64,000 bases of DNA, from positions 124,001-188,000 of the IMG/VR virus record IMGVR_UViG_3300034117_002447; one strand, given 5' to 3'. Shown one piece after another: positions 575 through 56,553 of the stretch. The notes under the pieces are model-generated. The model made no database searches. It was not told the origin of the DNA and saw nothing but the letters and a program-made list of their open reading frames with translations. A program made the translations under genes and the position numbers. Position 1 is the stretch's first letter; every line of letters starts with the position of its first letter.

Positions 575-790
575 TTAGTTACTGTTTTTCTTGGCATTTT
601 CCAGACAGGCTTGGAACTCTTCTTCGGTTAAGAAGTCTGAATCTTCTATAACCAGCTTCTTTAAGGTTGCTGCCTGGATCTCTTTTACTAGGGAGTCCTT
701 ATCTACCTTACCTTTAAATAGATCTCCTTCTGCAAAGAGTATATCTACCGCCATCTCGGCCATGGTACTTGCGTGTTCCATTGTTAGCAT
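575..790 (-). CDS. Hypothetical protein
   Basis: 71-aa acidic ORF; start overlaps the end of the sigma gene. Confidence 0.6.
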   Translation of the reverse strand: MLTMEHASTMAEMAVDILFAEGDLFKGKVDKDSLVKEIQAATLKKLVIEDSDFLTEEEFQACLENAKKNSN

Positions 791-1512
791 GATACTACCT
801 CCTTTCTCATTTGCGCTCTAGCAACTTTAAGAGAACGATTTACTTCTGATGGAGTCTTACCAATTAACTCTGCAATTTCTTTTGTTGATAATCCATCGCC
901 AACCAATCCATAAAATAACTCTACGATTTGGCGATCGCTTGCTTTTAATTTGCCAAGTAATCGGGCAAGAATCATGTCTCTCTCTTGGTTCTCGAATGGA
1001 TCAGCGAAATCGGTCTTAAGAATCAAGTCGCCGATTGTTGTTGCACTGTCCTCGTCCCCGACTGGTTTGTCAATCGCAACGTTAGTAAGATTGATTTCTT
1101 CGCCTTTCATTTTACGTTTGTAAAGATCGTATTCCTGATTTACTGGAATTCTAACGGTTCTTCCCAAGTCGCAAAGAGCAAGGTTAAGACGCTTGCGAAT
1201 CCAGAACTGAGCGTAAGTAATAAACTTAACATCTTTGTCTGACGTAAACTTGCGAGCGGCTTCGATTAGACCAGCGTTTCCTTCTTGGATGAGGTCATCG
1301 ATTGGCAGACCCATACCAATAAACTTGTTGGCTAAGGTTACAACGAACTTAAGGTTCGCGGTGACTAGGGAGTTAAGCGCTTCGTCATCTCCTAACTGGA
1401 TTCTGTCAGCTAACGCTCCTTCTTCGCATTTACTTAACGGTCTAGCCAATCCGTCCAGGCTTTTAAAGTATTGGGGTAGTCCCGCACTTGTTTCGAATCT
1501 TGTATTTTTCAT
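784..1512 (-). CDS. RNA polymerase sigma-70 family factor (RpoD/RpoH-like, no region 1.1)
   Basis: ANLKFVVTLANKF, DDLIQEGNAGLIEAARKF, KFITYAQFWIR, RTVRIP, region 4 HTH LSTKEIAELIG; start moved to ATG 1512 downstream of early promoter. Confidence 0.92.
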   Translation of the reverse strand: MKNTRFETSAGLPQYFKSLDGLARPLSKCEEGALADRIQLGDDEALNSLVTANLKFVVTLANKFIGMGLPIDDLIQEGNAGLIEAARKFTSDKDVKFITYAQFWIRKRLNLALCDLGRTVRIPVNQEYDLYKRKMKGEEINLTNVAIDKPVGDEDSATTIGDLILKTDFADPFENQERDMILARLLGKLKASDRQIVELFYGLVGDGLSTKEIAELIGKTPSEVNRSLKVARAQMRKEVVSC

Positions 1513-1612
1513 GGTTTGATTTTTTAATTGATTAATATGATACAAATATAAAAAGAATAATTGATATAAAAAAATATTTTATGACTTATTTTTAAAAAGT
1601 TTTACTAGGGAG

Positions 1613-2053
1613 TTAAGCAGCTACTTCCTCTTGGCTGTTTCGGACGAACGCTTTGTCTGCCCAAGTCTTAGCGTTACACAGTCTGTAATTAGTTTGACTG
1701 TATAGATTACTATTAGACCAGTCCTGATTGATATCGCCTACCTCCATTTCAAGAAACATTGCAGTATCCATTAGGATTATCGTGTTACCTTTGCGGGCGA
1801 AGACAGTTAACCATGTATTAAAGCCTTCCGCTCTGAACTCGATGGTTTGTAAAGCTCCCTTCTTGAATCCGCGGAAAACATCCATTGCTGTCTTCCAGCT
1901 TGCGCCGCTAGACCATTTAGACTGGATTCCATGGTCGTTTACTACCGTCATGAATCCGGCCTGAACTTTAACGATTGCGCGGTATTCGCCTGCTTGACCT
2001 GTTATAAAGTCTACTTGGCCGATTCTTTCTGAGTTAATGATTTGATTTTTCAT
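1613..2053 (-). CDS. Hypothetical early protein
   Basis: 146-aa ORF downstream of promoter 2085. Confidence 0.8.
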   Translation of the reverse strand: MKNQIINSERIGQVDFITGQAGEYRAIVKVQAGFMTVVNDHGIQSKWSSGASWKTAMDVFRGFKKGALQTIEFRAEGFNTWLTVFARKGNTIILMDTAMFLEMEVGDINQDWSNSNLYSQTNYRLCNAKTWADKAFVRNSQEEVAA

Positions 2054-2148
2054 GTTGGTTTGATTTAAGAGTTAATTGATATAGCAAATATAAAAAGAAT
2101 AATTGACACTAAAAAATTTATTATGACTTATTTTACTAGGGAGTCCGA

Positions 2149-2630
2149 CTATGCGGTAGGCAGGAATCCGAATTGGGATAGAACTCTTAGACCCAAAAGT
2201 TCCAGGTCCGTAAGTCGATTGAAAACATTCCGGTCCAATCCAAAACCAGACTCGATACTTCCGGGTGGGTTAACTTGCGGCCGCACTTGCAACAGGCACC
2301 AGCATGCTGGATTTCTGTGTTGCGTAGGCTAGCTGGATTCGATAGCACTCTCACCAACCAGTCCGTGATTTGGATTTCTCTATCCGAAATATTCGCTGCT
2401 CGCTTGAAGCGACGAGTATCCGAGAAGAAGGCTCCAACGTAGCGGTAGCCGATTTCGCCGTCGCCCAATAGAGCAAGACTCATGAAGTAACAGTTGCTTA
2501 GCTGGCCAGTTGTACGGTCCTTGCGGCGTTTCATCTTGATTTTTATCCATTGGCCTGTAGTTGGATTAGTAATAGTCAACTGTGCTTTTCCAGCAAGGGC
2601 AGCGATAGCGAAGTGATTAGGATTTATCAT
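2149..2630 (-). pseudogene. DUF6011-like Zn-finger protein with frameshifted C-terminus
   Basis: CCKCGRKLTHPE, then the motif SIESGFG..PEC appears in other frames; one A missing at 2259-2260, TTGGA tandem duplication at 2234-2243; alternative frame stops at TAG 2149-2151. Confidence 0.6.
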
Positions 2631-2839
2631 ATTGGTAATAATTAATTGATTAAGTAAATATAACAAGAACTTTTGACAATAAAAAATTTTTGGCTAATTA
2701 TTTTCAGAAAAGTTATTAACAATCTAAAAAGTTTATTGTAGGTCGGAGTATACCCTCTGCGCTTGTTAGGCGAACCGTTTAATTATAAAGCTAATATAAG
2801 CAGAATACTTGACAGTAAAAAACTTTTTGTGAATTATTT

Positions 2840-3076
2840 TTAAACTCGTTGGATGGATGGATCGACAACTCTCCACGGTCTCGAGGGATCGATCACGGAT
2901 ATAATGTTAGGAATCAAATTATTCTCTATCCATCGGGAAAATGTTTGACCACCGAACTGCATGTCTCGATTTAAGCTCTCATGAAGCTCCATTGGAATAT
3001 CAACACTTGCGGAAATTCTACCGGTTTGAGATCGTGAATCCGTGTATTCAACTGTAAATGTTATGTTAGACGCCAT
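2840..3076 (-). CDS. Hypothetical early protein
   Basis: 78-aa ORF with ATG. Confidence 0.7.
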   Translation of the reverse strand: MASNITFTVEYTDSRSQTGRISASVDIPMELHESLNRDMQFGGQTFSRWIENNLIPNIISVIDPSRPWRVVDPSIQRV

Positions 3077-3103
3077 AGTTTCTAGATTTTAAAAGATTAA
3101 TAA

Positions 3104-3226
3104 TTATCCGCAGTATACTGATTTACCGCAGTCTCTGCATTTTACGAGCTTCATTCCTGAAGCATGACGAACCGCAACGTAGGTATTTACGTGTTGGCAA
3201 GCTGGTTTCTGTTCTTGATTTTTCAT
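3104..3226 (-). CDS. Small Cys/His Zn-ribbon-like protein (40 aa)
   Basis: MKNQEQKPACQHVN...KCRDCGKSVYCG; ATG 3226 just downstream of promoter 3231. Confidence 0.65.
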   Translation of the reverse strand: MKNQEQKPACQHVNTYVAVRHASGMKLVKCRDCGKSVYCG

Positions 3227-3535
3227 AATACAAATATAACTAAAAAAGCCGAGACTAAAAAATCCCGGCTCATTTATTTTTAAAATAATTTTAGGCTTCG
3301 TCGCCGATGAGGTCCCATGCGGTTTCGCCGGTTCCGCGGCCGTCGCAGGTAATTTCATAGTTTGGGTCCATGCCGCTCGAGAGCACGTCGTCCAGTAATT
3401 CGGAGATTGAGCGAAATTCTTTGGTGTAGTAATTACATTTTAAACTGTACATATTTTCTTGTTTTAATTGGTTAATACAAATATAACAAAAAAAGCCGAG
3501 ACTAAAAAATCTCGGCTCATTTATTTTCAAAAAAG
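3227..3535 (-). repeat. Two near-identical ~60-bp direct repeats (3227-3290, 3474-3535), each a terminator hairpin fused to an early promoter
   Basis: aatacaaatataac(t/a)aaaaaagccgagactaaaaaatc(c/t)cggctcatttatttt present twice. Confidence 0.9.
3291..3452 (-). CDS. Hypothetical early protein (53 aa)
   Basis: MYSLKCNYYTKEFRSISELLDDV...; ATG 3452 downstream of promoter 3478. Confidence 0.75.
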   Translation of the reverse strand: MYSLKCNYYTKEFRSISELLDDVLSSGMDPNYEITCDGRGTGETAWDLIGDEA

Positions 3536-3537
3536 TT

Positions 3538-3915
3538 TTATCCAAAGATAATGTCTTCGTAAAATACGGTTTGAATAATTACGTCCGCCGTTTCCGCATC
3601 GTCGTTTTCTTCAACCATTTGCAACAAGAATCTCAATGGAGTTTTATCCACTCGAGCATGGACATCAGCTAACGTAATCGTTCGCGTATATTCTCCTTCG
3701 CATTCTTCGTCTACCATAGTTAGACCTTTTCCGTCTCGTAAAATCTGTAACAAGACATCTTCGTAACAAGGAGATTCCAATTTCTTGCGCGCTTCTTCGT
3801 AATCCGCCTTCTCGAAAGTAAGATCTAATCCATAGCCTGACATATAGCCTAGCCCGTTGCAAAGAGCAGTATGAAAAAATTCTTCTGCTTCTTTTTGATT
3901 TAATTTAATTTCCAT
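3538..3915 (-). CDS. Hypothetical early protein
   Basis: MEIKLNQKEAEEFFHTALCNGLGY...ADVIIQTVFYEDIIFG; ATG 3915 downstream of promoter 3958. Confidence 0.8.
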   Translation of the reverse strand: MEIKLNQKEAEEFFHTALCNGLGYMSGYGLDLTFEKADYEEARKKLESPCYEDVLLQILRDGKGLTMVDEECEGEYTRTITLADVHARVDKTPLRFLLQMVEENDDAETADVIIQTVFYEDIIFG

Positions 3916-4020
3916 TTCTTTTTTGGTTTTAAAGTTAATTAATATTATTATACAGTACAAATATAAAAAGAATACTTGACACTAAAAAATTTATTTTTAA
4001 ATATTTTCTCTTTAACCCAC

Positions 4021-4044
4021 AAAGGAATCTTATCTTAAGATTCC
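4021..4044 (-). terminator. Intrinsic terminator after the tRNA-like RNA
   Basis: GGAATCTTA-AGA-TAAGATTCC-TTT on the minus strand. Confidence 0.65.
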
Positions 4045-4079
4045 AATGAGGTATCAATCAACCAAACCAATAGTTGTTG

Positions 4080-4187
4080 TGGAGAGATCCGGATTCGAAC
4101 CGGATGGACGAACTCAAGCAACTGTTTGACGTACAGCGTTTCGTCCTCACTTTTGTCAAATACCTCGTTCCAACGAGGATTCTCTCC
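4080..4187 (-). ncRNA. Atypical tRNA-like RNA (108 nt) with a 57-nt non-canonical centre; no encoded CCA
   Basis: Acceptor GGAGAGA/TCTCTCC + A73; D-arm CCTC-GTTGGAAC-GAGG; T-arm TCCGG-TTCGAAT-CCGGA; no canonical YU-NNN-R anticodon loop. Confidence 0.75.
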
Positions 4188-4192
4188 TTGTC

Positions 4193-4471
4193 TTAGTTAA
4201 GACTTATTCCAAGACCAGCAAGCATTGAGCTTAACGAGTCTTCTTCTTTCTTCTGCACCGGCTCGTTTGCTCGAGCAGAATATTCTTTAATCATAGATTC
4301 CAAAAGCTGAATTCCTTCTTCCGTTTCTACTGCACCAATTGCTGCGAGTAGAGTCTTGCCGATTACCAATAATTCAGGTTCTTGTTTTTTTAGACCGCCG
4401 ATAATCAAGCTCTGTGCTAGATCGGTTAAATCCAATAAGATCTTTGTTTTATCTGAGCTTATATTTTGCAT
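4193..4471 (-). CDS. Hypothetical protein
   Basis: 92-aa ORF; TAGTATAAT box at 4504-4512. Confidence 0.75.
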   Translation of the reverse strand: MQNISSDKTKILLDLTDLAQSLIIGGLKKQEPELLVIGKTLLAAIGAVETEEGIQLLESMIKEYSARANEPVQKKEEDSLSSMLAGLGISLN

Positions 4472-4562
4472 GGTCTGTTTCTCCTTCCGTTTGTTATATA
4501 ATTATTATACTAAAAAGCCGGACCCATTGGACCCGGCTTCTAGAGAAAGAGATTCGGATAGC

Positions 4563-4733
4563 TTAGTATCCGTTTAATCTTTTGTTTTCCGCATAGACGC
4601 TGGTCCAAAACTCGTTGAATCCTAATTTCTCGTCCGGCTCGACTGTGCGCGCAACGCGTAGAGTTCCGTACGTTAAATCAATTGTTTCTCCTTGTGGTTC
4701 TCCAAAGAATAATTTAGCTAAGAATTTTTGCAT
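4563..4733 (-). CDS. Hypothetical early protein (56 aa, not in ORF track)
   Basis: MQKFLAKLFFGEPQGETIDLTYGTL...RLNGY*; downstream of promoter 4760. Confidence 0.7.
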   Translation of the reverse strand: MQKFLAKLFFGEPQGETIDLTYGTLRVARTVEPDEKLGFNEFWTSVYAENKRLNGY

Positions 4734-4817
4734 GGTTTCTGGTTTTAGTTGTTATAATACAAATATAATAATAATCTTTGATACTAGAAAATATTTTATC
4801 CTAGAGTTATTAACAAT

Positions 4818-5765
4818 TTACCAACCGCTGCCAAACGGGGTATATGCAATGGCTGACTCTCGGAAATTAGGATTAAAATATCTTAACTTATCTTTTTGAT
4901 TCTTCTTTAATAATTTAAAAGATAATTTAATCCGTTGTCTAACCGTCTCGACACTGCAATCGAATTCTTCCGCTATTGTCTTTATTGGAGTCGGTTGGTA
5001 TCCATCGAGACCGTAATGCTTTACTATAAACAAGCGATTATCTCCTTTCAAGGTTTTGAGCATTGCTTCAACCACAGACTCTTTCTCGAGACCAAGCAGA
5101 TCTGAATCAGTTGATATACTTGAAGCAAGGCTGTCTATAAATTCTTCGTTCGAGTCCGGGTCTATCTTTTGATTAAGACTCTTTTCCCAACTTGTTGCGG
5201 TTAAGACCTCAGCTATTCTAGACGCAGTTACCTTGGTATCTGACATTGCTGGATCCGCCGCTACGATATCTGCTATTTCTTCAAACGTTGCGCTACGCTC
5301 GGTCTTGTGCTCAACCTGCTCCGCCGCTTTTAGAGCCCGAGTTACAATTAGTTGGGCAGAGTTTGGAACACGAACCGTCTTGACATTATGTTGAAGACAA
5401 TCTAGTATTGCTTGTTTAATCCAAAAAACCGCGTATGATATAAACTTAAACCCACGGTCCGGCTCGAACCTGTGAACCGCCTTGACCAGACCAAGATTAC
5501 CTTCAGAAACCAGATCTTCCAGTGTTAGGCTGGTCTTGTTGACTAGGCTTGAATACTGTTTGGCAACCGTAATTACAAAAAGCAGATTCGCTTTTATAAT
5601 CCGCTGTTCCGCGGTCGGGTCTCCAGCTTTAAACCGCCTAAACAATGCTATCTCTTCCTCGCTCGAGAGAACCGGAGTCCGGCGGATTTCCTGCAAATAC
5701 CGGTTAAAGCTTTCGCGGTTATCAGCAACTGTTCTAACTATATTCTTTGAATCTATCTTCTTCAT
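4818..5765 (-). CDS. RNA polymerase sigma factor, Bacteroidetes RpoD-like
   Basis: YLQEIRRTPVLSSEEE, KANLLFVITVAKQY, DLVSEGNLGLVKAVHRFEPDRGFKFISYAVFWIKQAI, region 4 IAEEFDCSVETVRQ. Confidence 0.95.
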   Translation of the reverse strand: MKKIDSKNIVRTVADNRESFNRYLQEIRRTPVLSSEEEIALFRRFKAGDPTAEQRIIKANLLFVITVAKQYSSLVNKTSLTLEDLVSEGNLGLVKAVHRFEPDRGFKFISYAVFWIKQAILDCLQHNVKTVRVPNSAQLIVTRALKAAEQVEHKTERSATFEEIADIVAADPAMSDTKVTASRIAEVLTATSWEKSLNQKIDPDSNEEFIDSLASSISTDSDLLGLEKESVVEAMLKTLKGDNRLFIVKHYGLDGYQPTPIKTIAEEFDCSVETVRQRIKLSFKLLKKNQKDKLRYFNPNFRESAIAYTPFGSGW

Positions 5766-5833
5766 AAAGTATATCTTACCAAAAAAAGAAAGGGCCGATC
5801 TCTCGGCCCAGTACATCAGTTCTTCAGTAATGG

Positions 5834-6010
5834 TTAATCTTCTTCGAATCCAGTAAATGGAAGTAACTCTAACTCTGCTGCTACTAACGTGGCTCTTGCT
5901 TCTGAACCGGTTAGGTAATCGTTAATAATGAAATCGAGTATCGCTGATTCTTGAATTCCTTGTGCTCTAAGATTTTCAAGGCTGGCTACTGCTTTTTGTC
6001 TGTCTGTCAT
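5834..6010 (-). CDS. Hypothetical protein (58 aa, not in ORF track)
   Basis: MTDRQKAVASLENLRAQGI...FTGFEED*. Confidence 0.65.
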   Translation of the reverse strand: MTDRQKAVASLENLRAQGIQESAILDFIINDYLTGSEARATLVAAELELLPFTGFEED

Positions 6011-6028
6011 GTCGCTAGATTTTACGGG

Positions 6029-6169
6029 TTAAAATTCAAAACTTGCAGTTCCGTGTACGTTTCCAGTTAAGACATTAAATGCTGCGTATCCAATTCCTAC
6101 TACGACCATTGCCATTAGCGTGAACGCCCATACCATCATAACTCCTTCTAAGATAATTCCCTTTTTCAT
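6029..6169 (-). CDS. Small membrane protein (46 aa, not in ORF track)
   Basis: MKKGIILEGVMMVWAFTLMAMVVVGIGYAAFNVL...; downstream of promoter 6204. Confidence 0.65.
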   Translation of the reverse strand: MKKGIILEGVMMVWAFTLMAMVVVGIGYAAFNVLTGNVHGTASFEF

Positions 6170-6270
6170 AATGTTTTGTTTTTAATTGGTTTGATTTATA
6201 AAGTAAATATAACAAGAACTTTTGAGACTAAAAAACTTTTTGTGATTTATTTTTCAGAAGTTATTAACAA

Positions 6271-6498
6271 TTACCAAGAGTCTTCTTCATCTTCATCATG
6301 GTCCGAAAGGGATACATCCCAATCTCCGTATCTGTCTCTAAACGCAATACCTCCGTGGATCTTCGGACCCACCTCGCCTATCCAATCTTGAATACTTAGG
6401 TTATCTTCATTGTGGTTTTTTAGATTCCACTGGGCTAGATCCTGTCTTACAAGTCTCCACCAGTCCTGCTTGTCTTTTGCGATTACTTCATTGCCCAT
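6271..6498 (-). CDS. Hypothetical early protein, acidic C-terminus
   Basis: 75-aa ORF downstream of promoter 6526. Confidence 0.75.
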   Translation of the reverse strand: MGNEVIAKDKQDWWRLVRQDLAQWNLKNHNEDNLSIQDWIGEVGPKIHGGIAFRDRYGDWDVSLSDHDEDEEDSW

Positions 6499-6657
6499 AG
6501 TACTGTAGTTTAATTGGTTATACTGTAAATATAATACTAATCTTTGAGACCCAAAAACTTTTTGTGAATTATTTTCAGTAGAGTTATTAACCGGTAATAT
6601 ATAAAAGTATAACCGTTGTTGAAACGTCTAGCTCAAATTTAAAAAATAATAAAAACA

Positions 6658-7269
6658 ATGAGTATAGACAAAAAGACCCAAAGATTACAAGAGTTAACTA
6701 GCATCGCGCCAACCGTCTCAATCAGACTAGACATGGAATGGTTAGCCTCAACTGAAAACACGGCAGACTTCCTGATTAGATTAACAAATACCAATACGAC
6801 AACCGTTAAATTTAACGCGTTGATTATTCGAGGAGTTCATTCCCCAAAGATAACAACTGGAACTATAACATGGAAAGCACTGAATAATAATATTGACCGG
6901 TCCTGGTTGGGCTGGCCTAGAGTAACTGCTAACTTGCCCTATATTTCAGGCCAGCGAAAGTTAAATTTCTCTTCCGCAACTAATATCTTTACCAACGAGA
7001 CCGCGCCCACCATACCGGCTGGAGCTGGAGTAGAGGTTGGAATTTTTAGGATTTCAACCTCAACCGCATGGAACCCAAACTCTAATTTTGGTTTTACTTG
7101 GGAAATGACTACCGGCGGAGTGATTGCTTATCTGGTTCCGGCCAAGCCGTCTTCGACTTCAGCGCTAGCGATTGGCATTATGCACTACGGTCCAATAACA
7201 TCTAATACATTGGGTAAATGCTTAACTGTGCAGGCTTCAAGCGAGCAGACCCTAAATAAAAAACCCTGA
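6658..7269 (+). CDS. T/N/S-rich predicted beta-sandwich protein
   Basis: 203-aa ORF, the only credible plus-strand gene in the early region; A-rich leader; hairpin 7260-7290 after the stop. Confidence 0.7.
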   Translation: MSIDKKTQRLQELTSIAPTVSIRLDMEWLASTENTADFLIRLTNTNTTTVKFNALIIRGVHSPKITTGTITWKALNNNIDRSWLGWPRVTANLPYISGQRKLNFSSATNIFTNETAPTIPAGAGVEVGIFRISTSTAWNPNSNFGFTWEMTTGGVIAYLVPAKPSSTSALAIGIMHYGPITSNTLGKCLTVQASSEQTLNKKP

Positions 7270-7313
7270 ATCTAAAAAATCCAGGGTCTATTATTTTTTA
7301 AAAAGATTTACTC

Positions 7314-7532
7314 TTATTTCTTAGACTCTAACTTGGTCTTTGGAAAAATAAGATGGGCAAGGAATACTAGACCCCAAGCCTGCACTGCGCTAATTGGTTT
7401 AGCACCAAAAATTTCGGGTACCAACCAGTTCCACAACCATTTTACTGGAAAAGCAACAACGATAGAAGCCAGCAAGCCAATCGCTAGAGCTCCAAGTATA
7501 GTTGCAATCTGTTCTGTTCTTTTTGAATTCAT
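7314..7532 (-). CDS. Small two-TM membrane protein
   Basis: Hydrophobic ILGALAIGLLASIVVAFPVKWLWNWL and AWGLVFLAHLIF. Confidence 0.7.
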   Translation of the reverse strand: MNSKRTEQIATILGALAIGLLASIVVAFPVKWLWNWLVPEIFGAKPISAVQAWGLVFLAHLIFPKTKLESKK

Positions 7533-7569
7533 AATCCTATGGGTTATTTTTGTTTAATAATATTATATC

Positions 7570-8065: not shown

Positions 8066-8141
8066 CTCTAATCTGTAATTATATTTCTTATACACAGCGG
8101 TAGACCAAAGTTCTAAGCTCTAGAGCAGAAAGACGGGTAGT

Positions 8142-9115: not shown

Positions 9116-9117
9116 CC

Positions 9118-45957: not shown

Positions 45958-45980
45958 TATAGTAATGTCCTCAGACTCAG

Positions 45981-49555: not shown

Positions 49556-49565
49556 GCGTATTTAA

Positions 49566-50195: not shown

Positions 50196-50415
50196 TTAAT
50201 TCTTGCATAATTTTGTAGTAATCAGGCTGTTCGCCTGTTTCCTTTACTATTTTATCTATTAGAGTCTTCTCCTTTTCCTTATTTGAATTTAGTGCATGCT
50301 CCAACTCAGTTTTTCTAAGCTGAAGAAGATTTGTCATTTTTTCAAGTTCAGATAAACCTGCATTGATTCGGTCGTATTCTGATATGATTTGCTTAATTTC
50401 TTTAAAGTGCTTCAT
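50188..50415 (-). CDS. Small coiled-coil protein
   Basis: 75-aa ORF coupled to neighbours. Confidence 0.75.
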   Translation of the reverse strand: MKHFKEIKQIISEYDRINAGLSELEKMTNLLQLRKTELEHALNSNKEKEKTLIDKIVKETGEQPDYYKIMQELNV

Positions 50416-50419
50416 GTTA

Positions 50420-51547
50420 TTAGTATCCTAAGGTTACTTTTATTTTTCCAGACATTAGTGCCGAGTATATTGCCTGTAAGTAATAGTCATTGTTTATGCC
50501 TGGAGCAATAGCTACTGGCTTAGAGTCAGCAGACTCAGCCTTATTCATATTTCCAGAAGTAGGACTATTAATCGTAGTTTGGTTACGTTGATCAATCTTT
50601 GCCCCTTCATTCATAACTGAGGTTGACGAGCTGGTTTGCGGCGAAATTGAAGTTACTGAGTTACTTAAGTTATTAACTGCGTCCGGTAAAGATTTAGATA
50701 AGCTAGTTACGCTTTTTTCTAACGTTTTATCTGGAGCTAGCATTTTTTTAACATTTGACGACTCAACTAATTTTGAACTTTTTACTTGAGTTAAGTTATT
50801 CGTAACCTCATCGGTTTTAGTATTAGTCGAGTCAGACTTTCCGGTAAGCGTCGAGAGTATTGAACTCTCTAATGTAGATAAATTAGAAGACTCGGCCTTT
50901 GATTTTTCAGAATTAGAGGTTACCTTCGTTAGTGAGTCTTTAGTTAATAAGTTAATTGCATCGGCATCCTTCGACCCGTTAGCTAATGATCTAAGCGATT
51001 CAATAAGAGCTGAATTGTTAACGATTGAGTTGATCGAGTCGGTCTTGCTCAAATTTTTAGTTAACGACTGTATTGACTCCATTACATTTTTACTGGAGTC
51101 TACTAATATATTAGATGAATTCACTGACGAATTTGAGGCAGCTGCTGCTAATTGACTAGGTAAAGAATTAGAAATTGACGTATTATTAACAGTAGTTGTA
51201 TTAGCTGGAGCTAATTGTAATTGGCTTTTCTCAATCTCAGCAGTTGTGACTTTTCCAGAAGTAGCGTCAGTTGGTTTTACAAGTACCTCAATAGGCTTAA
51301 GTTCAATAACTACTGGTTTATCTAAATCTACTGGGTTTAAGTCAACTCCATCAACTGTGGGCGAAGGAGTTTCAATTGGAACTGATCTAACTGAAGTAGT
51401 CGCTTGAGTATTTACATTCTTTAAGAGTTCACCTTCGAGTATCGCGTCGCCAGTTGGAGCTTTTTTACTGAAAACTCTATCTAATGCAGCAAGAAGAACT
51501 GACTCTTGATCAGTTTCAAAGGCAGAAGAGTTTTCTAGGTTAGTCAT
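50420..51547 (-). CDS. S/T/N-rich low-complexity late protein
   Basis: 375 aa; late box at 51564. Confidence 0.8.
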   Translation of the reverse strand: MTNLENSSAFETDQESVLLAALDRVFSKKAPTGDAILEGELLKNVNTQATTSVRSVPIETPSPTVDGVDLNPVDLDKPVVIELKPIEVLVKPTDATSGKVTTAEIEKSQLQLAPANTTTVNNTSISNSLPSQLAAAASNSSVNSSNILVDSSKNVMESIQSLTKNLSKTDSINSIVNNSALIESLRSLANGSKDADAINLLTKDSLTKVTSNSEKSKAESSNLSTLESSILSTLTGKSDSTNTKTDEVTNNLTQVKSSKLVESSNVKKMLAPDKTLEKSVTSLSKSLPDAVNNLSNSVTSISPQTSSSTSVMNEGAKIDQRNQTTINSPTSGNMNKAESADSKPVAIAPGINNDYYLQAIYSALMSGKIKVTLGY

Positions 51548-51595
51548 TGTGTAATCTTTTTAGTTATTTATTAAAAAAAGAAGGACTTGAGTCGA

Positions 51596-51766
51596 TTAGT
51601 CCTCAAGTCCTGTTTGAATTTCAAATGTTTCTTGAACAGATTCTCCAGACTCGTCTACTAGAAATTTAACGTAACTTAAATACTCATAGAACGGTAGAGT
51701 GTACAGTTCGGTTATCGATTGATTCAGCTTCACGGCCAAGAGACGGTTTGTCTCAAATAAGTTCAT
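51596..51766 (-). CDS. Small baseplate-hub assembly protein (T4 gp51-like position and motif)
   Basis: MNLFETNRLLAVKLNQSITELYTLPFYEY; overlaps end of upstream hub protein. Confidence 0.55.
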   Translation of the reverse strand: MNLFETNRLLAVKLNQSITELYTLPFYEYLSYVKFLVDESGESVQETFEIQTGLED

Positions 51767-52781
51767 TAAGTCTACCTGAAATAAGGAAAAGATCTTTGAT
51801 CGTGAAGCTGTCTGACGAAAAAATTGAACTGGATAATTTTGACCCACATTTAGGACAAATTGTTCCGATTGAATTATCTCGTGAAGCTTGCATCATTTCT
51901 GAGAACTTTGTAATAAATGTAAATTTATTTAGGTTCCAGGAAAATGATTCAGATTGAATAGATGAATATTGTTCCTGTCCAAACTTTGACCAGTCTTGAA
52001 TAAGGTATGGTGCAATTTTAATAAAAGATTTATCAATTTGGCGACCAGTTAATTTAGACTCAGCTATTCGTTTACGAAGTCTTTCAATTACACCGAGAGT
52101 CGGCATGTACAGGTAAAACGTCTCATTTAACTTCTGGGAAACTACTTCAAAGCATCGATATTCGTCAGAATACCAAACCTCAACTTCTTCAGGAAGATCG
52201 AATAGTTGTAACATGTTGCTTCTGACCTTAACGTCATCGCTCCAAGCACCGTCTTCTGAGCAAGTTTGAGTACACGCAATTTTAGTAAATAGCTCATTTT
52301 GTCCTTCTGGAAAAGTTATTTCGTGAATTACAAAGATGATGTACAATCGGTCGACTTCTGAAATATCTCTCCAAGTTAACCAGGATTGTCCGCCGTTTAC
52401 TTTAAAACGTGTACATTTCTCAATTATAAAATTTAGTTTGTCGTCTATGTCTAAGACATCGCTATCGTCGATAGTCGACCAGTGTCGAATCTCAGAAACA
52501 GTCGCTGCTCTAACCGTTAACTCAGAGCCTTTAGCGTAGAATAGTCCACGTGACGGTAAATTTTCTAATGGAATGTTTTTCCAAAAGTTATCATTTGCGC
52601 CAGAAATGGTCGATTGAATTGGTCCGGCTGAGATAGCTTGGCCTAAACTAGTGACTGGTTTTTCAGATTCAATTGATTTATTGGAGTTATTAGAGTTCTT
52701 GCCGTATTTAGCGTCCTCAGATTCAAGGAATGCTTGAACTTCATCCTCTTGATTAAGCGGACGGTCTTGTTCGTTGCCCAT
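51753..52781 (-). CDS. Baseplate hub/tail assembly protein (T4 gp26-like)
   Basis: LPSRG.FY...VRAATVSE...D..LN.I...C; DRLYIIF..HEITF; C-terminal CPKCG. Confidence 0.6.
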   Translation of the reverse strand: MGNEQDRPLNQEDEVQAFLESEDAKYGKNSNNSNKSIESEKPVTSLGQAISAGPIQSTISGANDNFWKNIPLENLPSRGLFYAKGSELTVRAATVSEIRHWSTIDDSDVLDIDDKLNFIIEKCTRFKVNGGQSWLTWRDISEVDRLYIIFVIHEITFPEGQNELFTKIACTQTCSEDGAWSDDVKVRSNMLQLFDLPEEVEVWYSDEYRCFEVVSQKLNETFYLYMPTLGVIERLRKRIAESKLTGRQIDKSFIKIAPYLIQDWSKFGQEQYSSIQSESFSWNLNKFTFITKFSEMMQASRDNSIGTICPKCGSKLSSSIFSSDSFTIKDLFLISGRLNELI

Positions 52782-52801
52782 AAATAAACAGTTTTTTAGA
52801 A

Positions 52802-53254
52802 TTATATCACGAAATCTAGGAAGGTTTTCGCAAGATACGATTTAGACTCATTAAGTCTATTTAAAGTTTCAGGATAAACTTCAATTACTTCCATTGTTTT
52901 TGGATCCCTAATGAAAGCTCTGATGGTTTTGTGCTTTTTATCAATTTTGAAAGCTTCAAACTTTCCGATAATATTTTCAGGTTCATGTTTCTTGTTTTTA
53001 AAAGTAGAGTTAACCTTAACTCCAGTTAATCTAGAACCCTTTTTGAATGCTTGATTTAAAGCCTTAACATCTTGGACAAAGTCGTCTACTTCAACCTGTT
53101 GAGGTCTAGACAAATCGGATAACGGTAAAATACTAATTGCAATACCGTTTGAGAAACCGCTTCTTGATGCAACAAAATTAAAATCGCCCTTCCCATAAAA
53201 AGGAAGACCTCTCATTGCTTGCTGTCTCTGACCGAATGTTAAGATTGGCGTCAT
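52802..53254 (-). CDS. Hypothetical late protein
   Basis: 150-aa ORF. Confidence 0.8.
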   Translation of the reverse strand: MTPILTFGQRQQAMRGLPFYGKGDFNFVASRSGFSNGIAISILPLSDLSRPQQVEVDDFVQDVKALNQAFKKGSRLTGVKVNSTFKNKKHEPENIIGKFEAFKIDKKHKTIRAFIRDPKTMEVIEVYPETLNRLNESKSYLAKTFLDFVI

Positions 53255-53583
53255 TATCTACTAAATGTTGTTGGTATACCTAATAGAACCATGTCAGCAG
53301 ATACTGTTAATTTAGAAAGAGTTGCATAGAAAGTTTCTCCTGGGAGAATTCGTACGTCTACGCCAGATCCTCCAATTCCTTGGTCAACGGTCCATACCGT
53401 AACAGTTTGTGCAGTAGTTTGAGGATTGTGAACTCCGAACCATGTATCAGTAAAGTAACCTACTCCAGTAGTTGCATCGGACGCAGTATCTCTAGTACTT
53501 TGAGTAGTAAAGACCGGCGTGTAATTTGTACTGTTATTAGCGGTTCCGTGTTTTTTTACAAGTTTTGCAACAATATTGTTCAT
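53254..53583 (-). CDS. Hypothetical beta-rich late protein
   Basis: 109-aa ORF, coupled stop/start. Confidence 0.8.
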   Translation of the reverse strand: MNNIVAKLVKKHGTANNSTNYTPVFTTQSTRDTASDATTGVGYFTDTWFGVHNPQTTAQTVTVWTVDQGIGGSGVDVRILPGETFYATLSKLTVSADMVLLGIPTTFSR

Positions 53584-53598
53584 TTCATTTTAGTATTT

Positions 53599-54297
53599 TT
53601 AGCAAGCACAATTGTTTGGATCAGTGTTGCTTTTTACATATACTACCAAGCCTTTAACCTTAATACTAAAGTCTAGATTTGGATTATGTATCTCTATCTT
53701 ATTTATCAGCTTAGTTGCGTTAAGAGTCTCAGGATTACTGAACTGTGAAAAGAACTGTGAAATTGGATATGAAATAGACGAACCTGTGTAGTCCGTAATA
53801 ATTATATCGCAAGATAGAGCGGCTGGCACAATGGCCTCACCGTTTTTATCAAGACTCGGATAGTCGATGTACAAGATACAGCCACGTGCGTAATTTCTGT
53901 CATTCTGTAGTAGATAATACGCTGGGCTTGAAGAAGTTCCTGCTGGAATTGCTGTAAAGTATTCTAATGGATTTGATACAGCTGGATAATTAGTGGGAGT
54001 AGTTACGTTTGCTTGGTAAGTTGGAATTATTGAATCTAGTGAATTATCATAGATCACTAAAGTTTCGCCAGGGTTTCCTCCACATACTTCAAAATCAATA
54101 GATTGACTTCCGTCTACTGGATATAGAAATTTCTCTAAATCACAAAAACTTGCTTCAGATTTTCCATTGTTAAAAATCTTAAAACAACGATCTAGTAATT
54201 TTAAAACCTTTTTAGTAGGATCGCCCGCGCATAGATTAGCAAATGAATTGTTAAATCTTTGGGCAATCGGATCGTCTTGAAATTTAATGTATGACAT
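53599..54297 (-). CDS. Hypothetical structural protein
   Basis: 232-aa ORF. Confidence 0.8.
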   Translation of the reverse strand: MSYIKFQDDPIAQRFNNSFANLCAGDPTKKVLKLLDRCFKIFNNGKSEASFCDLEKFLYPVDGSQSIDFEVCGGNPGETLVIYDNSLDSIIPTYQANVTTPTNYPAVSNPLEYFTAIPAGTSSSPAYYLLQNDRNYARGCILYIDYPSLDKNGEAIVPAALSCDIIITDYTGSSISYPISQFFSQFSNPETLNATKLINKIEIHNPNLDFSIKVKGLVVYVKSNTDPNNCAC

Positions 54298-54312
54298 TCA
54301 TGGTTGACTTTT

Positions 54313-55089
54313 TTAAATAACGTCGCTAAATAATATTCCACTTTTGTGTGAAGTAAGGCCTCTGGCTATTTTATCATCGATTGACATTTGTATATCTTTA
54401 TTATCTACCTGTGTTTCAGTTGGAATTTCTTCAATTTGACTTGGAGAAATCTCTACTTCATCCGTGATCACGTCTTCTTCAATTACAACCGGTTCGGTTT
54501 CGTATACTTCTTGCTCGCTAGCAGGAAAAGTCTCAATTTTTTCCAAATCCTCAAACAGATCATCCGATGGTATCTCAATTGCTTGAGTAACAGCGTCAGT
54601 AATTTGTGGATTTACAGGATCACCTACTATATCATTTACGGTATCATTTACGGTATCAGCCGGTTTAATGTAGTCAACTAGTGATTTAATGAAGCCTAAT
54701 GCAACGATTGGTAGAATTGCTCCACTAACAATTGAAAGTACTCGTTTTTGGTATATCAATTCTTCTTCAACTAGGCCAAATAATTCAATCCATCCTTGAA
54801 AATCCTTAAGGTGAACGTATGTGTAATAGGTATTTCCCATTGCCTGCATTGCAGTTAATAGAATAAAAAGAGCCCAAACAATTCCCTTATTCATCTTATC
54901 TAATGTGATAATTGATGCAAGAGAAGCTGCTGCTCCTACCTCAAATGCGATTGCTAGGCTAATTGCTAACCATGGTGGGTTAGACATACTAAAGAAATCA
55001 ATAACGTGGATTGTTGAAATTACTGATACTAATAAGTATAGAGTAACAAACGTCCCAATAATAAAGATTTTTGTTGCTTTGCTTGACAT
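54313..55089 (-). CDS. Multi-TM membrane protein with acidic C-terminal tail
   Basis: Four hydrophobic helices (LAIAFEVGAAASL, etc.); 12-bp tandem duplication near 54630-54660. Confidence 0.8.
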   Translation of the reverse strand: MSSKATKIFIIGTFVTLYLLVSVISTIHVIDFFSMSNPPWLAISLAIAFEVGAAASLASIITLDKMNKGIVWALFILLTAMQAMGNTYYTYVHLKDFQGWIELFGLVEEELIYQKRVLSIVSGAILPIVALGFIKSLVDYIKPADTVNDTVNDIVGDPVNPQITDAVTQAIEIPSDDLFEDLEKIETFPASEQEVYETEPVVIEEDVITDEVEISPSQIEEIPTETQVDNKDIQMSIDDKIARGLTSHKSGILFSDVI

Positions 55090-55388
55090 TACTTAGAATT
55101 TCTGATTTTTTCTATTTCTAAATCGTATTGGTTCATACGATCATCAGGTCTAACCGTTGTTCTAATAACTGAATTCCAGTCGTATAGTGTACGTTTGGAC
55201 GCTTTTAAACCTTCAACCTCAATCATTTTCTTAAGATCTGAGGTATACACTGAATCAATTCTTTGATTCATTAGCTTTTCCTGTTTTTCAACTTTTGCAA
55301 TTTTACTTGAATTATTGCACTGTTGTACCATTAGGATTAACAGTAATCCAAGTACAATTTTCTCAAAATGTAATTTAATGAATTTCAT
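55089..55388 (-). CDS. Membrane-anchored or lipoprotein-like protein
   Basis: IVLGLLLILMVQQC; late box at 55407. Confidence 0.75.
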   Translation of the reverse strand: MKFIKLHFEKIVLGLLLILMVQQCNNSSKIAKVEKQEKLMNQRIDSVYTSDLKKMIEVEGLKASKRTLYDWNSVIRTTVRPDDRMNQYDLEIEKIRNSK

Positions 55389-55414
55389 AAAAGTTATTTC
55401 TTTTAGTTATTTAT

Positions 55415-55921
55415 TTACTTTCCGTTAATAATTTGAAGAGCCGACTCTTGTATTTGGCTGATGTTATTAACTAAATAGCCAATGTAAGTTATTCCGAAAT
55501 AGGCGATTAGGGCAAACCCTAGGACTCTTAATAGATTTGAAAATTTGAATTTAGAATCGTATTTAATTAGAATTAAGAACGCGTAATACTCATCTGTTTT
55601 AATTCGAGTAGAGGACACATTAATTATTTCAACTAAATTATGATCGGCGAATCGACCCTGTATTTTAGAAACTGACTCAAATACTCGACTTTTCTCAAGA
55701 TCAGCTAGATCACCAGTCGCTAACAGAGTTTCAGGTTCAAGATTAAGAACATAATAGACACGTCTCAATAAGTCAGTTCTGGCATTCAAATCCTTAAAAA
55801 AGTTTTGAGTTTCCATCTTCTTTATCTGCTTTCTATAAAAGACATAATTATTAAGGTCCTTGATAATGTCCTTAGCCGAATTAAAGGCAATGACTGGATT
55901 TATAAAGTTTAATAGTTTCAT
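55415..55921 (-). CDS. Hypothetical protein with C-terminal TM helix
   Basis: 168 aa; VLGFALIAYFGITYIGYL. Confidence 0.8.
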   Translation of the reverse strand: MKLLNFINPVIAFNSAKDIIKDLNNYVFYRKQIKKMETQNFFKDLNARTDLLRRVYYVLNLEPETLLATGDLADLEKSRVFESVSKIQGRFADHNLVEIINVSSTRIKTDEYYAFLILIKYDSKFKFSNLLRVLGFALIAYFGITYIGYLVNNISQIQESALQIINGK

Positions 55922-55923
55922 AG

Positions 55924-56553
55924 TTAAAAGTATTCAGTTAATCGGTCTACCATTTCCGGATTTTTAGTTAAAACAGCTTCCTTTAACATTTTACGAGCTT
56001 TTCGTATTTTGGTTTTAACTGTATTTAGATTCATTGCATATTTCTCAGCAATTTCATTACCTCGCATGTGATGTAATTCCTTGTCAATTAGGATAAATTT
56101 TTCAATACAGTCAGGGAGCCCGTTTAATTCAGAAGTAGTCATGGTGTAGAGAGAGTCCATGTAAATCTCTTTTTCGAAAGTACTTACTGACTCGTCTGGT
56201 AAATTTAGAGGTTTTGCTAAATTGTCAATGCTGGTTGCGTATTGAACTTTTAACTTATGTTGGTGGAGTAGGGCTTCGTTTTTAGCGATAGTATAGATCC
56301 ACGTAGTGAACCTATAACTATCGCTGTATGAAGCAAGTCCCTTAAAGATTTTAAATAGCGTATTATGTAAAACCTCATCCGTCTCATCTGGGTCATTAAA
56401 AAACTTCCAAATGAAGTATTTTAGTTTGGGATACATTATTGAAGCTAGTCGATTTCTGTCTCTTTCCGTGTATTTGCCAGATTTAATAAGCTCCGCAAGG
56501 CTCTGCATTTCGTCATTTAGCTGCTTGTTAATTAAGTCGTACGCGCTCATCAA
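55924..56553 (-). CDS. ECF-type RNA polymerase sigma factor
   Basis: DEVLHNTLFKIF...FTTWIYTIAKNE; region 4 EIAEKYAMNLNTVKTKIRKARKML. Confidence 0.9.
   Translation of the reverse strand: MMSAYDLINKQLNDEMQSLAELIKSGKYTERDRNRLASIMYPKLKYFIWKFFNDPDETDEVLHNTLFKIFKGLASYSDSYRFTTWIYTIAKNEALLHQHKLKVQYATSIDNLAKPLNLPDESVSTFEKEIYMDSLYTMTTSELNGLPDCIEKFILIDKELHHMRGNEIAEKYAMNLNTVKTKIRKARKMLKEAVLTKNPEMVDRLTEYF

What the first reader, a model, noticed from the sequence alone, without database searches (positions are those of the whole stretch)
784..56553. Three phage sigma factors and three distinct promoter classes: a possible sigma cascade
Seen: RpoD-like sigma 784-1512 lies under a host-type TATATTTG promoter. 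RpoD-like sigma 4818-5765 follows a TGGTAAGAT variant of the TAGTATAAT class. An ECF sigma lies in the late operon. Class II boxes precede mainly repair/metabolism genes and ATAAATAA precedes virion genes. Known: Bacteroidetes primary sigma reads TAnnTTTG rather than TATAAT, so class II probably needs a phage sigma. Region 2.4 differs between the two RpoD-likes (YAQFWIRKR vs YAVFWIKQA). Which sigma reads which class is inference.
Basis: partly seen in the sequence, partly recalled or inferred. Interest (0 to 1): 0.65.

Follow-up and report, generated by a model that had tools for sequence, protein, structure and literature searches.

The report
Multi-sigma transcription programme of a jumbo phage
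The window belongs to a 271-kb T4-related freshwater phage, probably of a Bacteroidota host, that has three real promoter classes and five sigma genes, so the proposed sigma cascade is largely right but the late sigma lies outside the window.

Summary
All three sigma genes are real (w784-1512, w4818-5765, w55924-56550). All three motif classes are far above chance and sit upstream of genes in sense orientation.

The one-sigma-per-class reading needs correcting. The window is part of a complete 270,962-bp T4-superfamily jumbo phage with five sigma genes.

- **Late class.** The box ATAAATAA is the T4-type late promoter (TATAAATA at -13 to -6). Its likeliest reader is a gp55-like minimal sigma outside the window, not the ECF-like sigma.
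- **Early class.** Class I is a 65-nt early-promoter module with 14 clustered, co-oriented copies. It ends in TATATTT(G/A), close to the Bacteroidota sigma-A -7 box. One copy drives sigma-1.
- **Middle class.** Class II is TAGTATAAT plus an optional -35-like TAAACC. It drives replication genes, and in variant form the gp55 operon. Relatives that lack sigma-2 and sigma-5 keep class II, so sigma-1 is its best candidate reader.
- **Unassigned.** Sigma-2, the late-operon ECF-like sigma-3 and sigma-5 have no assigned promoters.

In many class II and III promoters the ATG sits exactly at the predicted +1, which would make those mRNAs leaderless.

No transcription start site was measured, so every sigma-to-promoter assignment is inference.

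The parts
784..1512 (-). sigma-1: a 242-aa RpoD-like sigma with a group-1-like region 1.2-2.4, no region-3 hit and an ECF-like region 4
   Evidence: Pfam r2 at 4.9e-13, r4_2 at 1.2e-6 and Sigma70_ECF at 1.8e-5. phrog_351. PDB SigA at 1.5e-29 over regions 1.2-2.4. Orthologues of 60-77% identity in G001, G003 and the MAG contig.
4818..5765 (-). sigma-2: a 315-aa group-2-like sigma with regions r1.2, r2, r3 and r4. It is accessory within the phage family.
   Evidence: Pfam. Best PDB hit is RpoS at 4.9e-37. 34% identical to the sigma-A of a Bacteroidetes MAG, sharing the FISYAV.WI.Q.IL pattern. No orthologue in G001 or G003. A 46% orthologue in the MAG contig.
5773..5781 (-). TGGTAAGAT box 16 nt before the sigma-2 ATG, directly after a terminator-like hairpin and T-run
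   Evidence: Sequence. The geometry resembles class II, but the core has 3 of 9 mismatches, is not enriched and is not conserved in the orthologue.
1536..7303 (-). Class I early-promoter cluster of eleven co-oriented 65-nt modules. They lie at w1536-1598, 2076-2140, 2652-2710, 2783-2844, 3220-3285, 3468-3533, 3949-4009, 4750-4814, 6195-6259, 6516-6581 and, weakly, 7256-7303.
   Evidence: nhmmer E-values from 2.5e-13 to 1e-7, with the weak copy at 0.002. Three further copies lie just outside the window. Clusters of the same kind surround the sigma-1 orthologue in G001 and G003.
4504..4512 (-). Class II box in the early region, 41 nt before a 92-aa ORF
   Evidence: It follows a terminator hairpin.
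16459..16467 (+). Class II box 31 nt before a 237-aa ORF, with AAACC in the -35 region
   Evidence: The orthologous site is conserved in G001.
28941..28949 (-). Class II box with the ATG 15 nt from the box start, which is leaderless geometry (119-aa ORF)
31321..31329 (-). Class II box with leaderless geometry (79-aa ORF)
34137..34145 (-). Class II box with leaderless geometry before the 324-aa endonuclease gene. The predicted +1 is w34130, the A of the ATG.
37892..37900 (-). Class II box after a terminator, with an in-frame ATG 16 nt from the box start
39045..39053 (-). Class II box with leaderless geometry before the NUDIX hydrolase gene
45678..45686 (-). Class II box 28 nt before the methyltransferase gene, with AGACC in the -35 region
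235..243 (-). Class II box in tandem with a class III box (w214-221) before the ORF that starts at w206
47540..47593 (-). Three tandem class III boxes (w47586-47593, 47563-47570, 47540-47547) before the 512-aa gene. The predicted +1 positions are w47581, 47558 and 47535.
   Evidence: Metatranscriptome contigs of a close relative cover the gene up to w47603, and depth falls to about 0 upstream of that point. This is weak evidence.
62226..62233 (-). Class III box heading the late operon that contains sigma-3
   Evidence: 30 nt before the 564-aa gene. That gene is a baseplate wedge protein.
55415..62203 (-). Late operon, in order: baseplate wedge (564 aa), 81 aa, 247 aa (weak TerS hit), TerL (652 aa), 103 aa, PhoH, sigma-3, and a 168-aa membrane-anchored protein
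   Evidence: The PhoH stop and the sigma-3 ATG are 12 nt apart. The PhoH, sigma-3, p168 order is conserved in G001 and G003.
55924..56550 (-). sigma-3: a 208-aa ECF-like sigma
   Evidence: Pfam r2 at 1.3e-8 and r4_2. TIGR02985 at 6.8e-19. phrog_1740. 76% and 59% orthologues in G001 and G003.
214..62737 (.). The remaining class III boxes that lie upstream of ORF starts. Plus strand: w8672, 9901, 11806, 14080, 15759, 18277, 21441, 24190, 29756, 31377, 62270 and 62730. Minus strand (first base): w221, 18265, 32895, 41102, 43395, 51571 and 55414.
   Evidence: Distances to the ATG are 12-59 nt. Two further copies (w52780+, w53706-) lie inside genes and are probably not promoters.

Best explanation
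The phage has no detected RNA polymerase beta homologue (the T7-like RNAP check was uninformative). It appears to run a T4/SPO1-style temporal programme on the host core RNA polymerase, in three tiers.

**Tier 1, early.** On entry, host sigma-A reads about 14 clustered class I modules. Each has an A-rich upstream block, a T6 run, TGTC, and TTATATTT(G/A)C as the -7/-10 box. These modules express small early genes, sigma-1 and, probably by read-through of a terminator, sigma-2.

**Tier 2, middle.** Sigma-1 combines a primary-sigma-like region 2 with a divergent, ECF-like region 4. It reads class II promoters: TAGTATAAT at -15 to -7 and, in about a third of sites, TAAACC-like at -35. Class II promoters drive the replication and nucleotide-metabolism genes. 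In the variant form AAAAC-N14-TAGTAGAAT they also drive the operon that encodes the gp55-like late sigma.

**Tier 3, late.** The gp55-like sigma lies outside the window. It reads class III promoters, ATAAATAA at -12 to -5 with no -35 element. These drive virion genes and the operon that carries ECF-like sigma-3.

**Leaderless mRNAs.** In 15 of 32 class II sites and 19 of 143 class III sites, the start codon sits exactly at the predicted +1. Those mRNAs would be leaderless.

**Status of the steps.**
- Shown: the genes, the motifs, their enrichment, conservation and geometry, and their gene associations.
- Inferred: which sigma reads which class, the timing, and the transcription start positions.
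For: - **Five sigma genes.**
- **gp55 homology.** phrog_234 at 1e-16. PDB 7d7c chain F, T4 gp55, residues 2-120 aligned to 2-120 at E 4.6e-4. T4 gp55 finds only this ORF in the genome.
- **T4 late promoter.** TATAAATA lies at -13 to -6, with a poorly conserved T at -13 (PMC1524935).
- **Class III conservation.** The box is kept at the orthologous position in 39 of 42 relatives. It is equally enriched in G001 and G003. No upstream conservation is seen across 145 sites.
- **T4-like core genes.** gp23, gp20 and gp17 homologues lie behind class III.
- **Class I.** Copies occur only around sigma-1, all in one orientation, in three genomes.
- **Host clues.** Shine-Dalgarno cores are depleted (4% against 9%) and an A-peak lies at -13/-14. 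A 77%-related phage contig is binned in a Bacteroidetes MAG. Sigma-A of Flavobacterium reads TAnnTTTG at -12 to -5 (PMC9723704).
- **Class II.** The -35-like rACC is positionally enriched, 13 of 41 sites at -19 to -17 from the box. The class is present in G001 and G003, which carry only sigma-1, sigma-3 and gp55-like. A conserved class II-like box precedes the gp55 operon in about 20 relatives.
- **Sigma-1 recognition residues.** The region 4.2 helix differs from the primary-sigma pattern that sigma-2 and host sigma-A keep.
- **Geometry statistics.** P = 2e-13 for class II and 4e-6 for class III, with an empty gap at 17-22 nt, P = 8e-12.
- **No phage RNAP.** No beta homologue was found.
Against: - No TSS or timing data exist. 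Only assembled metatranscriptome contigs were available, and one extends 10 nt beyond the most distal late box.
- No gp33 or gp45 homologue was detected. The T4 late mechanism may therefore not apply fully.
- The class I -7 box ends in A rather than G in most copies in relatives, so reading by host sigma-A is not assured.
- The host is inferred, not known.
- Bacteroidota sigma-A also has a primary-type region 2. Similarity of sigma-1 region 2 to SigA therefore does not by itself predict TATAAT reading.
- Sigma-3 could in principle read class II if it were packaged or expressed earlier.
- Gene starts come from my own heuristic caller.
Confidence: 0.6

Rival explanations
1. Sigma-1 or sigma-2 reads TAGTATAAT, and the late-operon ECF-like sigma-3 reads ATAAATAA. 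The three window sigmas alone would then form the cascade.
For: All three genes and all three motif classes are real. Sigma-3 is conserved in relatives. No gp33 or gp45 partner for gp55 was found.
Against: - Sigma-3 lies inside an operon headed by the very class it would have to read, and is tightly coupled to PhoH. It therefore cannot start late transcription.
- A gp55 homologue exists, and ATAAATAA matches the gp55-type promoter.
- ECF sigmas normally need a -35 AAC element and a CGT-type -10 element. Class III has no -35 conservation.
Confidence: 0.08
2. Class II is read by host sigma-A, alone or remodelled by a phage factor as in T4 MotA/AsiA middle transcription. Sigma-1 would then serve another purpose, for example redirecting host genes or supporting early promoters.
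For: - Class II keeps T-12, A-11 and T-7, which Bacteroidota -7 boxes also have.
- The sigma assignments are untested.
- Some class II boxes lie inside the early region.
Against: - Class II lacks the TTTG part of the host -7 box.
- Class II has its own -35-like TAAACC.
- Sigma-1 is the only early-expressed phage sigma conserved wherever class II is conserved.
- Class II and class I are sharply distinct, with no intermediates seen.
Confidence: 0.17
3. The boxes are not promoters but translation-initiation or RNA-processing signals. On this view they are A-rich elements used by ribosomes that do not rely on Shine-Dalgarno pairing.
For: Upstream regions are generally A-rich, with a peak at -13/-14. 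Degenerate A-rich 8-mers are also enriched.
Against: - Only about a quarter of genes carry a box.
- Boxes follow terminator hairpins and occur as divergent pairs and as a tandem triple up to 74 nt from the ATG.
- One box precedes a tmRNA gene.
- Distances are bimodal, with the ATG at the predicted +1 in one mode. A ribosome-binding element upstream of the mRNA 5' end makes no sense there.
- The motif equals the known T4 late promoter.
Confidence: 0.05

Closest known systems
Phage T4 late transcription (gp55 sigma, gp33 co-activator, gp45 clamp; promoter TATAAATA at -13 to -6)
   Same: - A gp55-like minimal sigma is present.
- The late box (n)ATAAATA(A) is essentially the same, with no -35 element.
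- The box drives gp23-, gp20- and gp17-like virion and packaging genes.
- It is conserved across about 40 relatives.
   Different: - No gp33 or gp45 homologue was detectable.
- The gp55-like protein is 139 aa, against 185 aa in T4.
- The host is probably Bacteroidota.
- A fraction of late mRNAs look leaderless.
- No MotA/AsiA-type middle system was looked for or seen. An RpoD-like sigma seems to fill that tier.
Bacillus phage SPO1 sigma cascade (host sigma-A, then gp28, then gp33/34)
   Same: - The early class includes the gene for the next sigma.
- The middle class precedes the late sigma gene.
- Each tier has its own -10/-35 consensus.
- The programme runs on host core RNAP.
   Different: - The late sigma is T4 gp55-type, not SPO1 gp33/34.
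- There are five sigma genes rather than three.
- Homology to gp28 was not tested.
- The phage lineage is different (T4 superfamily, gp23-type capsid).
Group 2 jumbo phages of Iyer et al. 2021 (PMC7824862)
   Same: These have a gp23-type capsid, no phage RNAP, and both a minimal sigma and RpoD-like sigmas. The group includes Bacteroidota phages (Lak, PTm1). TerL and gp55-like of this phage hit those same phages.
   Different: That paper reports gene content and a gp33 orthologue. Here no gp33 was found, and promoter classes, their geometry and a proposed wiring are derived.
Bacteroidota sigma-A promoters (-33 TTTG, -7 TAnnTTTG)
   Same: The class I -7 box is TATATTTG in 7 of the 14 G000 copies, with a T-run about 18-20 nt upstream. 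The 5'UTRs of about 25-40 nt resemble host ones.
   Different: Class I is a 65-nt conserved module. Most copies in relatives end in TTTA or TTAG rather than TTTG. The -33 element is a T6 run, not a clear TTTG.

Membership tests
T4-type late transcription system | gp55-family minimal sigma | tested here: met
   phrog_234 at 1e-16. PDB 7d7c_F gp55 at 4.6e-4, aligned end to end. Reciprocal phmmer hit.
T4-type late transcription system | Late promoter consisting of a single 8-bp TATAAATA-like box at about -13 to -6 with no -35 element, upstream of virion genes | tested here: met
   ATAAATAA is enriched 14-fold upstream of genes. No upstream information content across 145 sites. It heads the capsid, portal, baseplate and TerL operons. 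The position relative to +1 is only inferred from the ATG-at-+1 geometry.
T4-type late transcription system | gp33 co-activator | tested here: not met
   phrog_254 gave no hit in six frames at E <= 1. phmmer with T4 gp33 gave no hit. A very divergent homologue cannot be excluded.
T4-type late transcription system | gp45 sliding clamp as mobile enhancer | tested here: not met
   PF09116 and phrog_223 gave no hit. The clamp-loader profile gave only weak AAA hits. Other clamp types were not searched.
Phage sigma cascade (SPO1 type) | The gene for the next-tier sigma lies behind a promoter of the previous tier | tested here: met
   Sigma-1 lies directly behind a class I module in G000, G001 and the MAG contig. 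The gp55 operon lies behind a conserved class II-like box. This is by sequence only.
Phage sigma cascade (SPO1 type) | Each sigma shown to direct core RNAP to its own promoter class, in temporal order | not testable with these tools
   Needs in vitro transcription or time-course 5'-end mapping. Only assembled metatranscriptome contigs were available.
Group 1/2 (RpoD/RpoS-like) sigma-70 family | Regions 1.2, 2, 3 and 4 all present | tested here: met
   Sigma-2 has all four Pfam regions and aligns with RpoS over 267 residues. Sigma-1 does not fully qualify. It has no region-3 hit, shows a gap of about 40 residues against sigma-A, and its region 4 scores best with the ECF-type models.
ECF (group 4) sigma factors | Only regions 2 and 4 (r4_2 type) | tested here: met
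   Sigma-3 and sigma-5.
ECF (group 4) sigma factors | Co-transcribed cognate anti-sigma factor | tested here: inconclusive
   A conserved 168-aa protein with one C-terminal TM helix follows sigma-3. It has no family hit. The complex prediction gave no verdict.
Bacteroidota sigma-A-dependent promoters | -7 box TAnnTTTG and -33 TTTG about 19-21 nt upstream | tested here: inconclusive
   7 of 14 G000 copies have TATATTTG. The others, and most copies in G001 and G003, have TATATTTA or TATATTAG. The upstream element is a T6 run.

The most novel reading that the evidence does not exclude
Beyond an ordinary three-tier cascade, the phage family may run a five-sigma programme with unusual features.

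1. The middle sigma is a natural chimera of a primary-type region 2 and an ECF-type region 4. It would read a matching hybrid promoter, TAAACC at -35 plus TAGTATAAT.
2. About half of middle mRNAs are leaderless, in a phylum where leaderless mRNAs are rare (5.5% in F. psychrophilum).
3. The conserved late-operon ECF-like sigma-3, with its membrane-anchored neighbour, forms a signal-gated fourth tier, or a factor carried over to the next infection.
4. gp55-type late transcription works here without gp33 and gp45.
Probability: 0.15. Interest if true: 0.7.

Novelty: new variant of a known kind. Interest (0 to 1): 0.5.

Why it matters
Transcription programmes of Bacteroidota phages and of uncultured freshwater jumbo phages are almost unstudied. 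Here sequence alone yields a concrete, testable wiring diagram: about 14 early, 30 or more middle and 55 or more late promoters with predicted start sites, and named sigma candidates. If the assignments hold, the phage offers orthogonal sigma-promoter pairs for Bacteroidota. It would also be a case of gp55-type late transcription without a recognisable gp33 or gp45, and a test bed for leaderless translation in a phylum that lacks Shine-Dalgarno use. The general principle of a phage sigma cascade is long known.

Tried and rejected
- **No close isolate.** Megablast of 20 kb against isolate phages found nothing.
- **gp33 and gp45.** Searches with PF09116, phrog_254, phrog_223 and T4 proteins by phmmer were all negative. 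The 221-aa gene before gp55-like is RuvC-like, not a clamp.
- **Phage RNAP.** The beta-subunit domain is absent. The T7-type search was uninformative because its control rang nowhere.
- **A fourth promoter class for the ECF-like sigmas.**
  - k-mer enrichment on unassigned upstream regions, and 11-mers shared by the intergenic regions of three genomes, gave only tRNA genes, terminators and degenerate class II and III variants.
  - GTAAAAGAT and GTAAGAT are not enriched.
- **Sigma-3 with the 168-aa neighbour.** Complex prediction gave no verdict, so it is neither support nor evidence against binding.
- **Host from the tmRNA.** BLAST across 401 Bacteroidota genomes matched only the universal 3' end.
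- **RNA evidence.**
  - Only two metatranscriptomes hold small parts of the stretch, as assembled contigs. These cannot show 5' ends.
- **Class III gene products in the window.** PHROGs and Pfam left most of them without any family.

Full report
**What the window is.** The window is the reverse strand of positions 193352-257351 of a 270,962-bp IMG/VR virus record (genome coordinate g = 257352 - w). The record has a 127-bp direct terminal repeat, 38% G+C, and is rated 100% complete.

No isolate phage is close at the DNA level. The large terminase is 30-38% identical to those of uncultured huge phages, Sphingomonas phage PAU, Tenacibaculum phages PTm1 and PTm5, and T4-like cyanophages. The genome has a gp23-type capsid gene and a gp20-type portal gene. 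It has no RNA polymerase beta homologue. This matches the 'group 2' jumbo phages, which are known to carry both minimal and RpoD-like sigma factors (PMC7824862).

**Host clues.** Several lines point to a freshwater Bacteroidota host.
- Shine-Dalgarno cores are depleted upstream of starts (4% against 9% in random 17-mers), with an A peak at -13/-14.
- A 254-kb relative whose sigma-1 is 77% identical is binned in an 'uncultured Bacteroidetes' MAG.
- The metatranscriptomes that hold parts of the stretch come from lake water and fresh water.

**The sigma genes.** All three window genes are sigma factors.
- *Sigma-1* (w784-1512, 242 aa) matches primary sigmas strongly over regions 1.2-2.4. It has no region-3 hit. 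Its region 4 scores best with the ECF-type models.
- *Sigma-2* (w4818-5765, 315 aa) has regions 1.2, 2, 3 and 4 and resembles RpoS and SigA.
- *Sigma-3* (w55924-56550, 208 aa) is ECF-like.

The whole genome has two more.
- A 139-aa protein at g139686-140105 belongs to the T4 gp55 family. It hits phrog_234 at 1e-16 and PDB 7d7c chain F at 4.6e-4 over the full length.
- A 174-aa ECF-like sigma-5 lies at g269583-270107.

Relatives G001 and G002 (253 kb, 93-94% complete) and G003 carry only the sigma-1, sigma-3 and gp55-like orthologues. Sigma-2 recurs only in the MAG contig, at 46% identity, and more distantly in G005.

**Class III (late).**
- ATAAATAA occurs 78 times in the genome. 54 copies lie within 60 nt upstream of a same-strand start, against a 3.2% baseline.
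- In the window there are 25 copies against 9.1 expected.
- Nothing upstream of the box is conserved.
- The box follows terminators, forms divergent pairs, and occurs as a tandem triple at w47540-47593.
- It heads the operons with the baseplate wedge and TerL, the portal, and the major capsid protein.
- It is equally enriched in G001 and G003. It is kept at the orthologous site downstream of the gp55-like gene in 39 of 42 relatives.
- The T4 late promoter is TATAAATA at -13 to -6, with a weakly conserved first T, and is read by gp55 (PMC1524935).

The simplest reading is a gp55-type late promoter. No gp33 or gp45 homologue was found.

**Class II (middle).**
- TAGTATAAT occurs 21 times, 13 of them upstream of genes. 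In the window there are 9 copies against 0.92 expected.
- About a third of sites also carry rACC, often TAAACC, starting 17-19 nt upstream of the box. That corresponds to roughly -34 to -32. The count is 13 of 41 sites, against about 0.2 per other position.
- Sites with degenerate -10 boxes tend to have a good TAAACC.
- Downstream genes include topoisomerase II, a split family-B DNA polymerase and its exonuclease, a gp32-like SSB, GroEL and a tRNA nucleotidyltransferase. In the window they include a methyltransferase, a NUDIX hydrolase and an endonuclease.
- A class II-like promoter, AAAAC(c/t)-N14-TAGTAGAAT, is conserved in about 20 diverged relatives upstream of the two-gene operon that encodes a RuvC-like protein and gp55-like. 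This links the middle tier to the late tier.

**Class I (early).** It contains AAAATAA, about 10 nt, a T6 run followed by AnTGTCAA, about 11 nt, and TTATATTT(G/A)C.
- A profile finds 14 copies in G000. All are on one strand within g250049-258880, and eleven are in the window at w1536-7303.
- The same profile finds 11 and about 13 copies in G001 and G003, again clustered around the sigma-1 orthologue.
- One module directly precedes sigma-1 in G000, G001 and the MAG contig.
- The -7 box fits the Bacteroidota sigma-A consensus TAnnTTTG (PMC9723704) in 7 of the 14 G000 copies. Most copies in relatives end in A.

'Host-type' is therefore plausible but not exact.

**Sigma-2 expression.** Two class I modules lie upstream of sigma-2. 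They are followed by two small ORFs, a terminator-like hairpin, and then TGGTAAGAT 16 nt before the ATG. That box is not statistically or phylogenetically supported as a class II member. Read-through from class I is at least as likely.

**Geometry.** If TATAAT in class II occupies -12 to -7, then +1 is box position 16. If ATAAATA in class III occupies -12 to -6, then +1 is box position 13.

Across three genomes:
- 15 of 32 class II sites have the ATG at 15-16 nt from the box start.
- 19 of 143 class III sites have it at 12-13 nt.
- The remaining sites cluster at 23-36 nt.
- Distances of 17-22 nt are nearly empty.
- The P values are 2e-13, 4e-6 and 8e-12.

The boxes thus behave like -10 elements whose transcripts are either leaderless or carry a leader of at least about 11 nt. 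This is indirect support for the predicted start sites. It is also unusual for the phylum, where 5.5% of mRNAs are leaderless in F. psychrophilum.

**Who reads what (inference).**
- *Late.* gp55-like reads class III.
- *Early.* Some sigma must act before any phage protein exists, and class I resembles host promoters. Host sigma-A is therefore assigned to class I.
- *Middle.* Class II persists in genomes whose only sigmas are sigma-1, sigma-3 and gp55-like. Sigma-3 is made from a class III operon and is tightly coupled to PhoH. Sigma-1 is made early, so sigma-1 is assigned to class II.
- *Residue patterns.* Sigma-2 and the Bacteroidetes sigma-A share FISYAV.WI.Q.IL in region 2.3-2.4 and E/R/Q in the 4.2 recognition helix. 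Sigma-1 has K and N at the positions of E. coli Q437 and T440, and a different 4.2 helix. That fits a non-TTGACA -35 element such as TAAACC.
- *Unassigned.* Sigma-2, sigma-3 and sigma-5 have no class, and no fourth motif was found.

**RNA data.** Only assembled contigs from two metatranscriptomes were available.
- One run holds 100%-identical pieces of a late gene.
- The other holds a relative of about 93% identity. Its contigs cover the 512-aa gene up to w47603, with depth dropping to about 0 upstream. This fits a promoter in that intergenic region, but it cannot place a start site.

**Verdict.** The cascade idea is partly supported and has been re-wired. It combines two classical schemes, a T4-type late tier and an SPO1-type middle sigma, in an unstudied phage lineage. 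It is a new variant of a known kind and is of moderate interest.

Noticed in passing
window 62300-62666 (+): A phage-encoded tmRNA (Rfam RF00023, 129 bits; ARAGORN tag ends in LLAA). It is preceded by a class III box (w62270-62277) and a GAGTATAAT box (w62280-62288). An orthologue of 78% identity lies in the MAG phage contig.
   Followed up: partly
genome 138918-138945 (outside the window; L107:18918-18945): A block CCCTCCCAACACCCTTATTCTACAG occurs once per genome and is strongly conserved across about 20 relatives. It lies about 40 nt upstream of the class II-like promoter of the RuvC-like/gp55-like operon. It may be an operator or a further promoter controlling the late switch.
   Followed up: partly
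window about 2740-2790 (-), with a second copy at genome 258724-258775: Two near-identical copies of a roughly 45-nt non-coding sequence lie immediately downstream of class I -10 boxes, with no ORF. They are candidate small early RNAs. G001 and G003 have a similar ACGGTTC-containing sequence after class I modules.
   Followed up: partly
window 55415-55921 (-): A 168-aa protein with a single C-terminal transmembrane helix follows sigma-3 directly. The synteny is conserved in G001 and G003, but the protein evolves faster (44% and 34% identity). It has no family hit and may be an anti-sigma partner.
   Followed up: partly
L097 / G006 contig C291 (CAIWBA010000291.1, 254 kb): A whole related jumbo-phage genome sits inside a MAG labelled 'uncultured Bacteroidetes'. 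This is either a binning artefact or a host link. The same MAG has a typical 285-aa Bacteroidota sigma-A on another contig.
   Followed up: partly
window 8001-10000: A G+C-rich patch (48% against 38% for the genome) with few convincing ORFs. A GGAGTCACCTGG repeat there is conserved in relatives. Rfam finds nothing at gathering score.
   Followed up: no
G005 (L115-L121): A more distant 137-kb phage fragment has sigma-2-like (36%) and sigma-1-like (32%) genes. Its upstream regions are enriched for canonical TAnnTTTG boxes (TACCTTTG, GTATATTTG) and for a different motif, ATATTTATA. It has no class I modules.
   Followed up: partly
genome 269555-269585 (L111), before sigma-5: Sigma-5 is preceded by a terminator hairpin and then TGGTATAGT, with the ATG 15 nt from the box start. 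This is class II-like leaderless geometry, so sigma-5 may also be a middle gene.
   Followed up: no
genome 28.4, 31-34, 48, 54 and 263-268 kb (outside the window): Many conserved blocks resemble tRNA T-arms, which suggests large tRNA gene clusters. They were not checked with ARAGORN.
   Followed up: no
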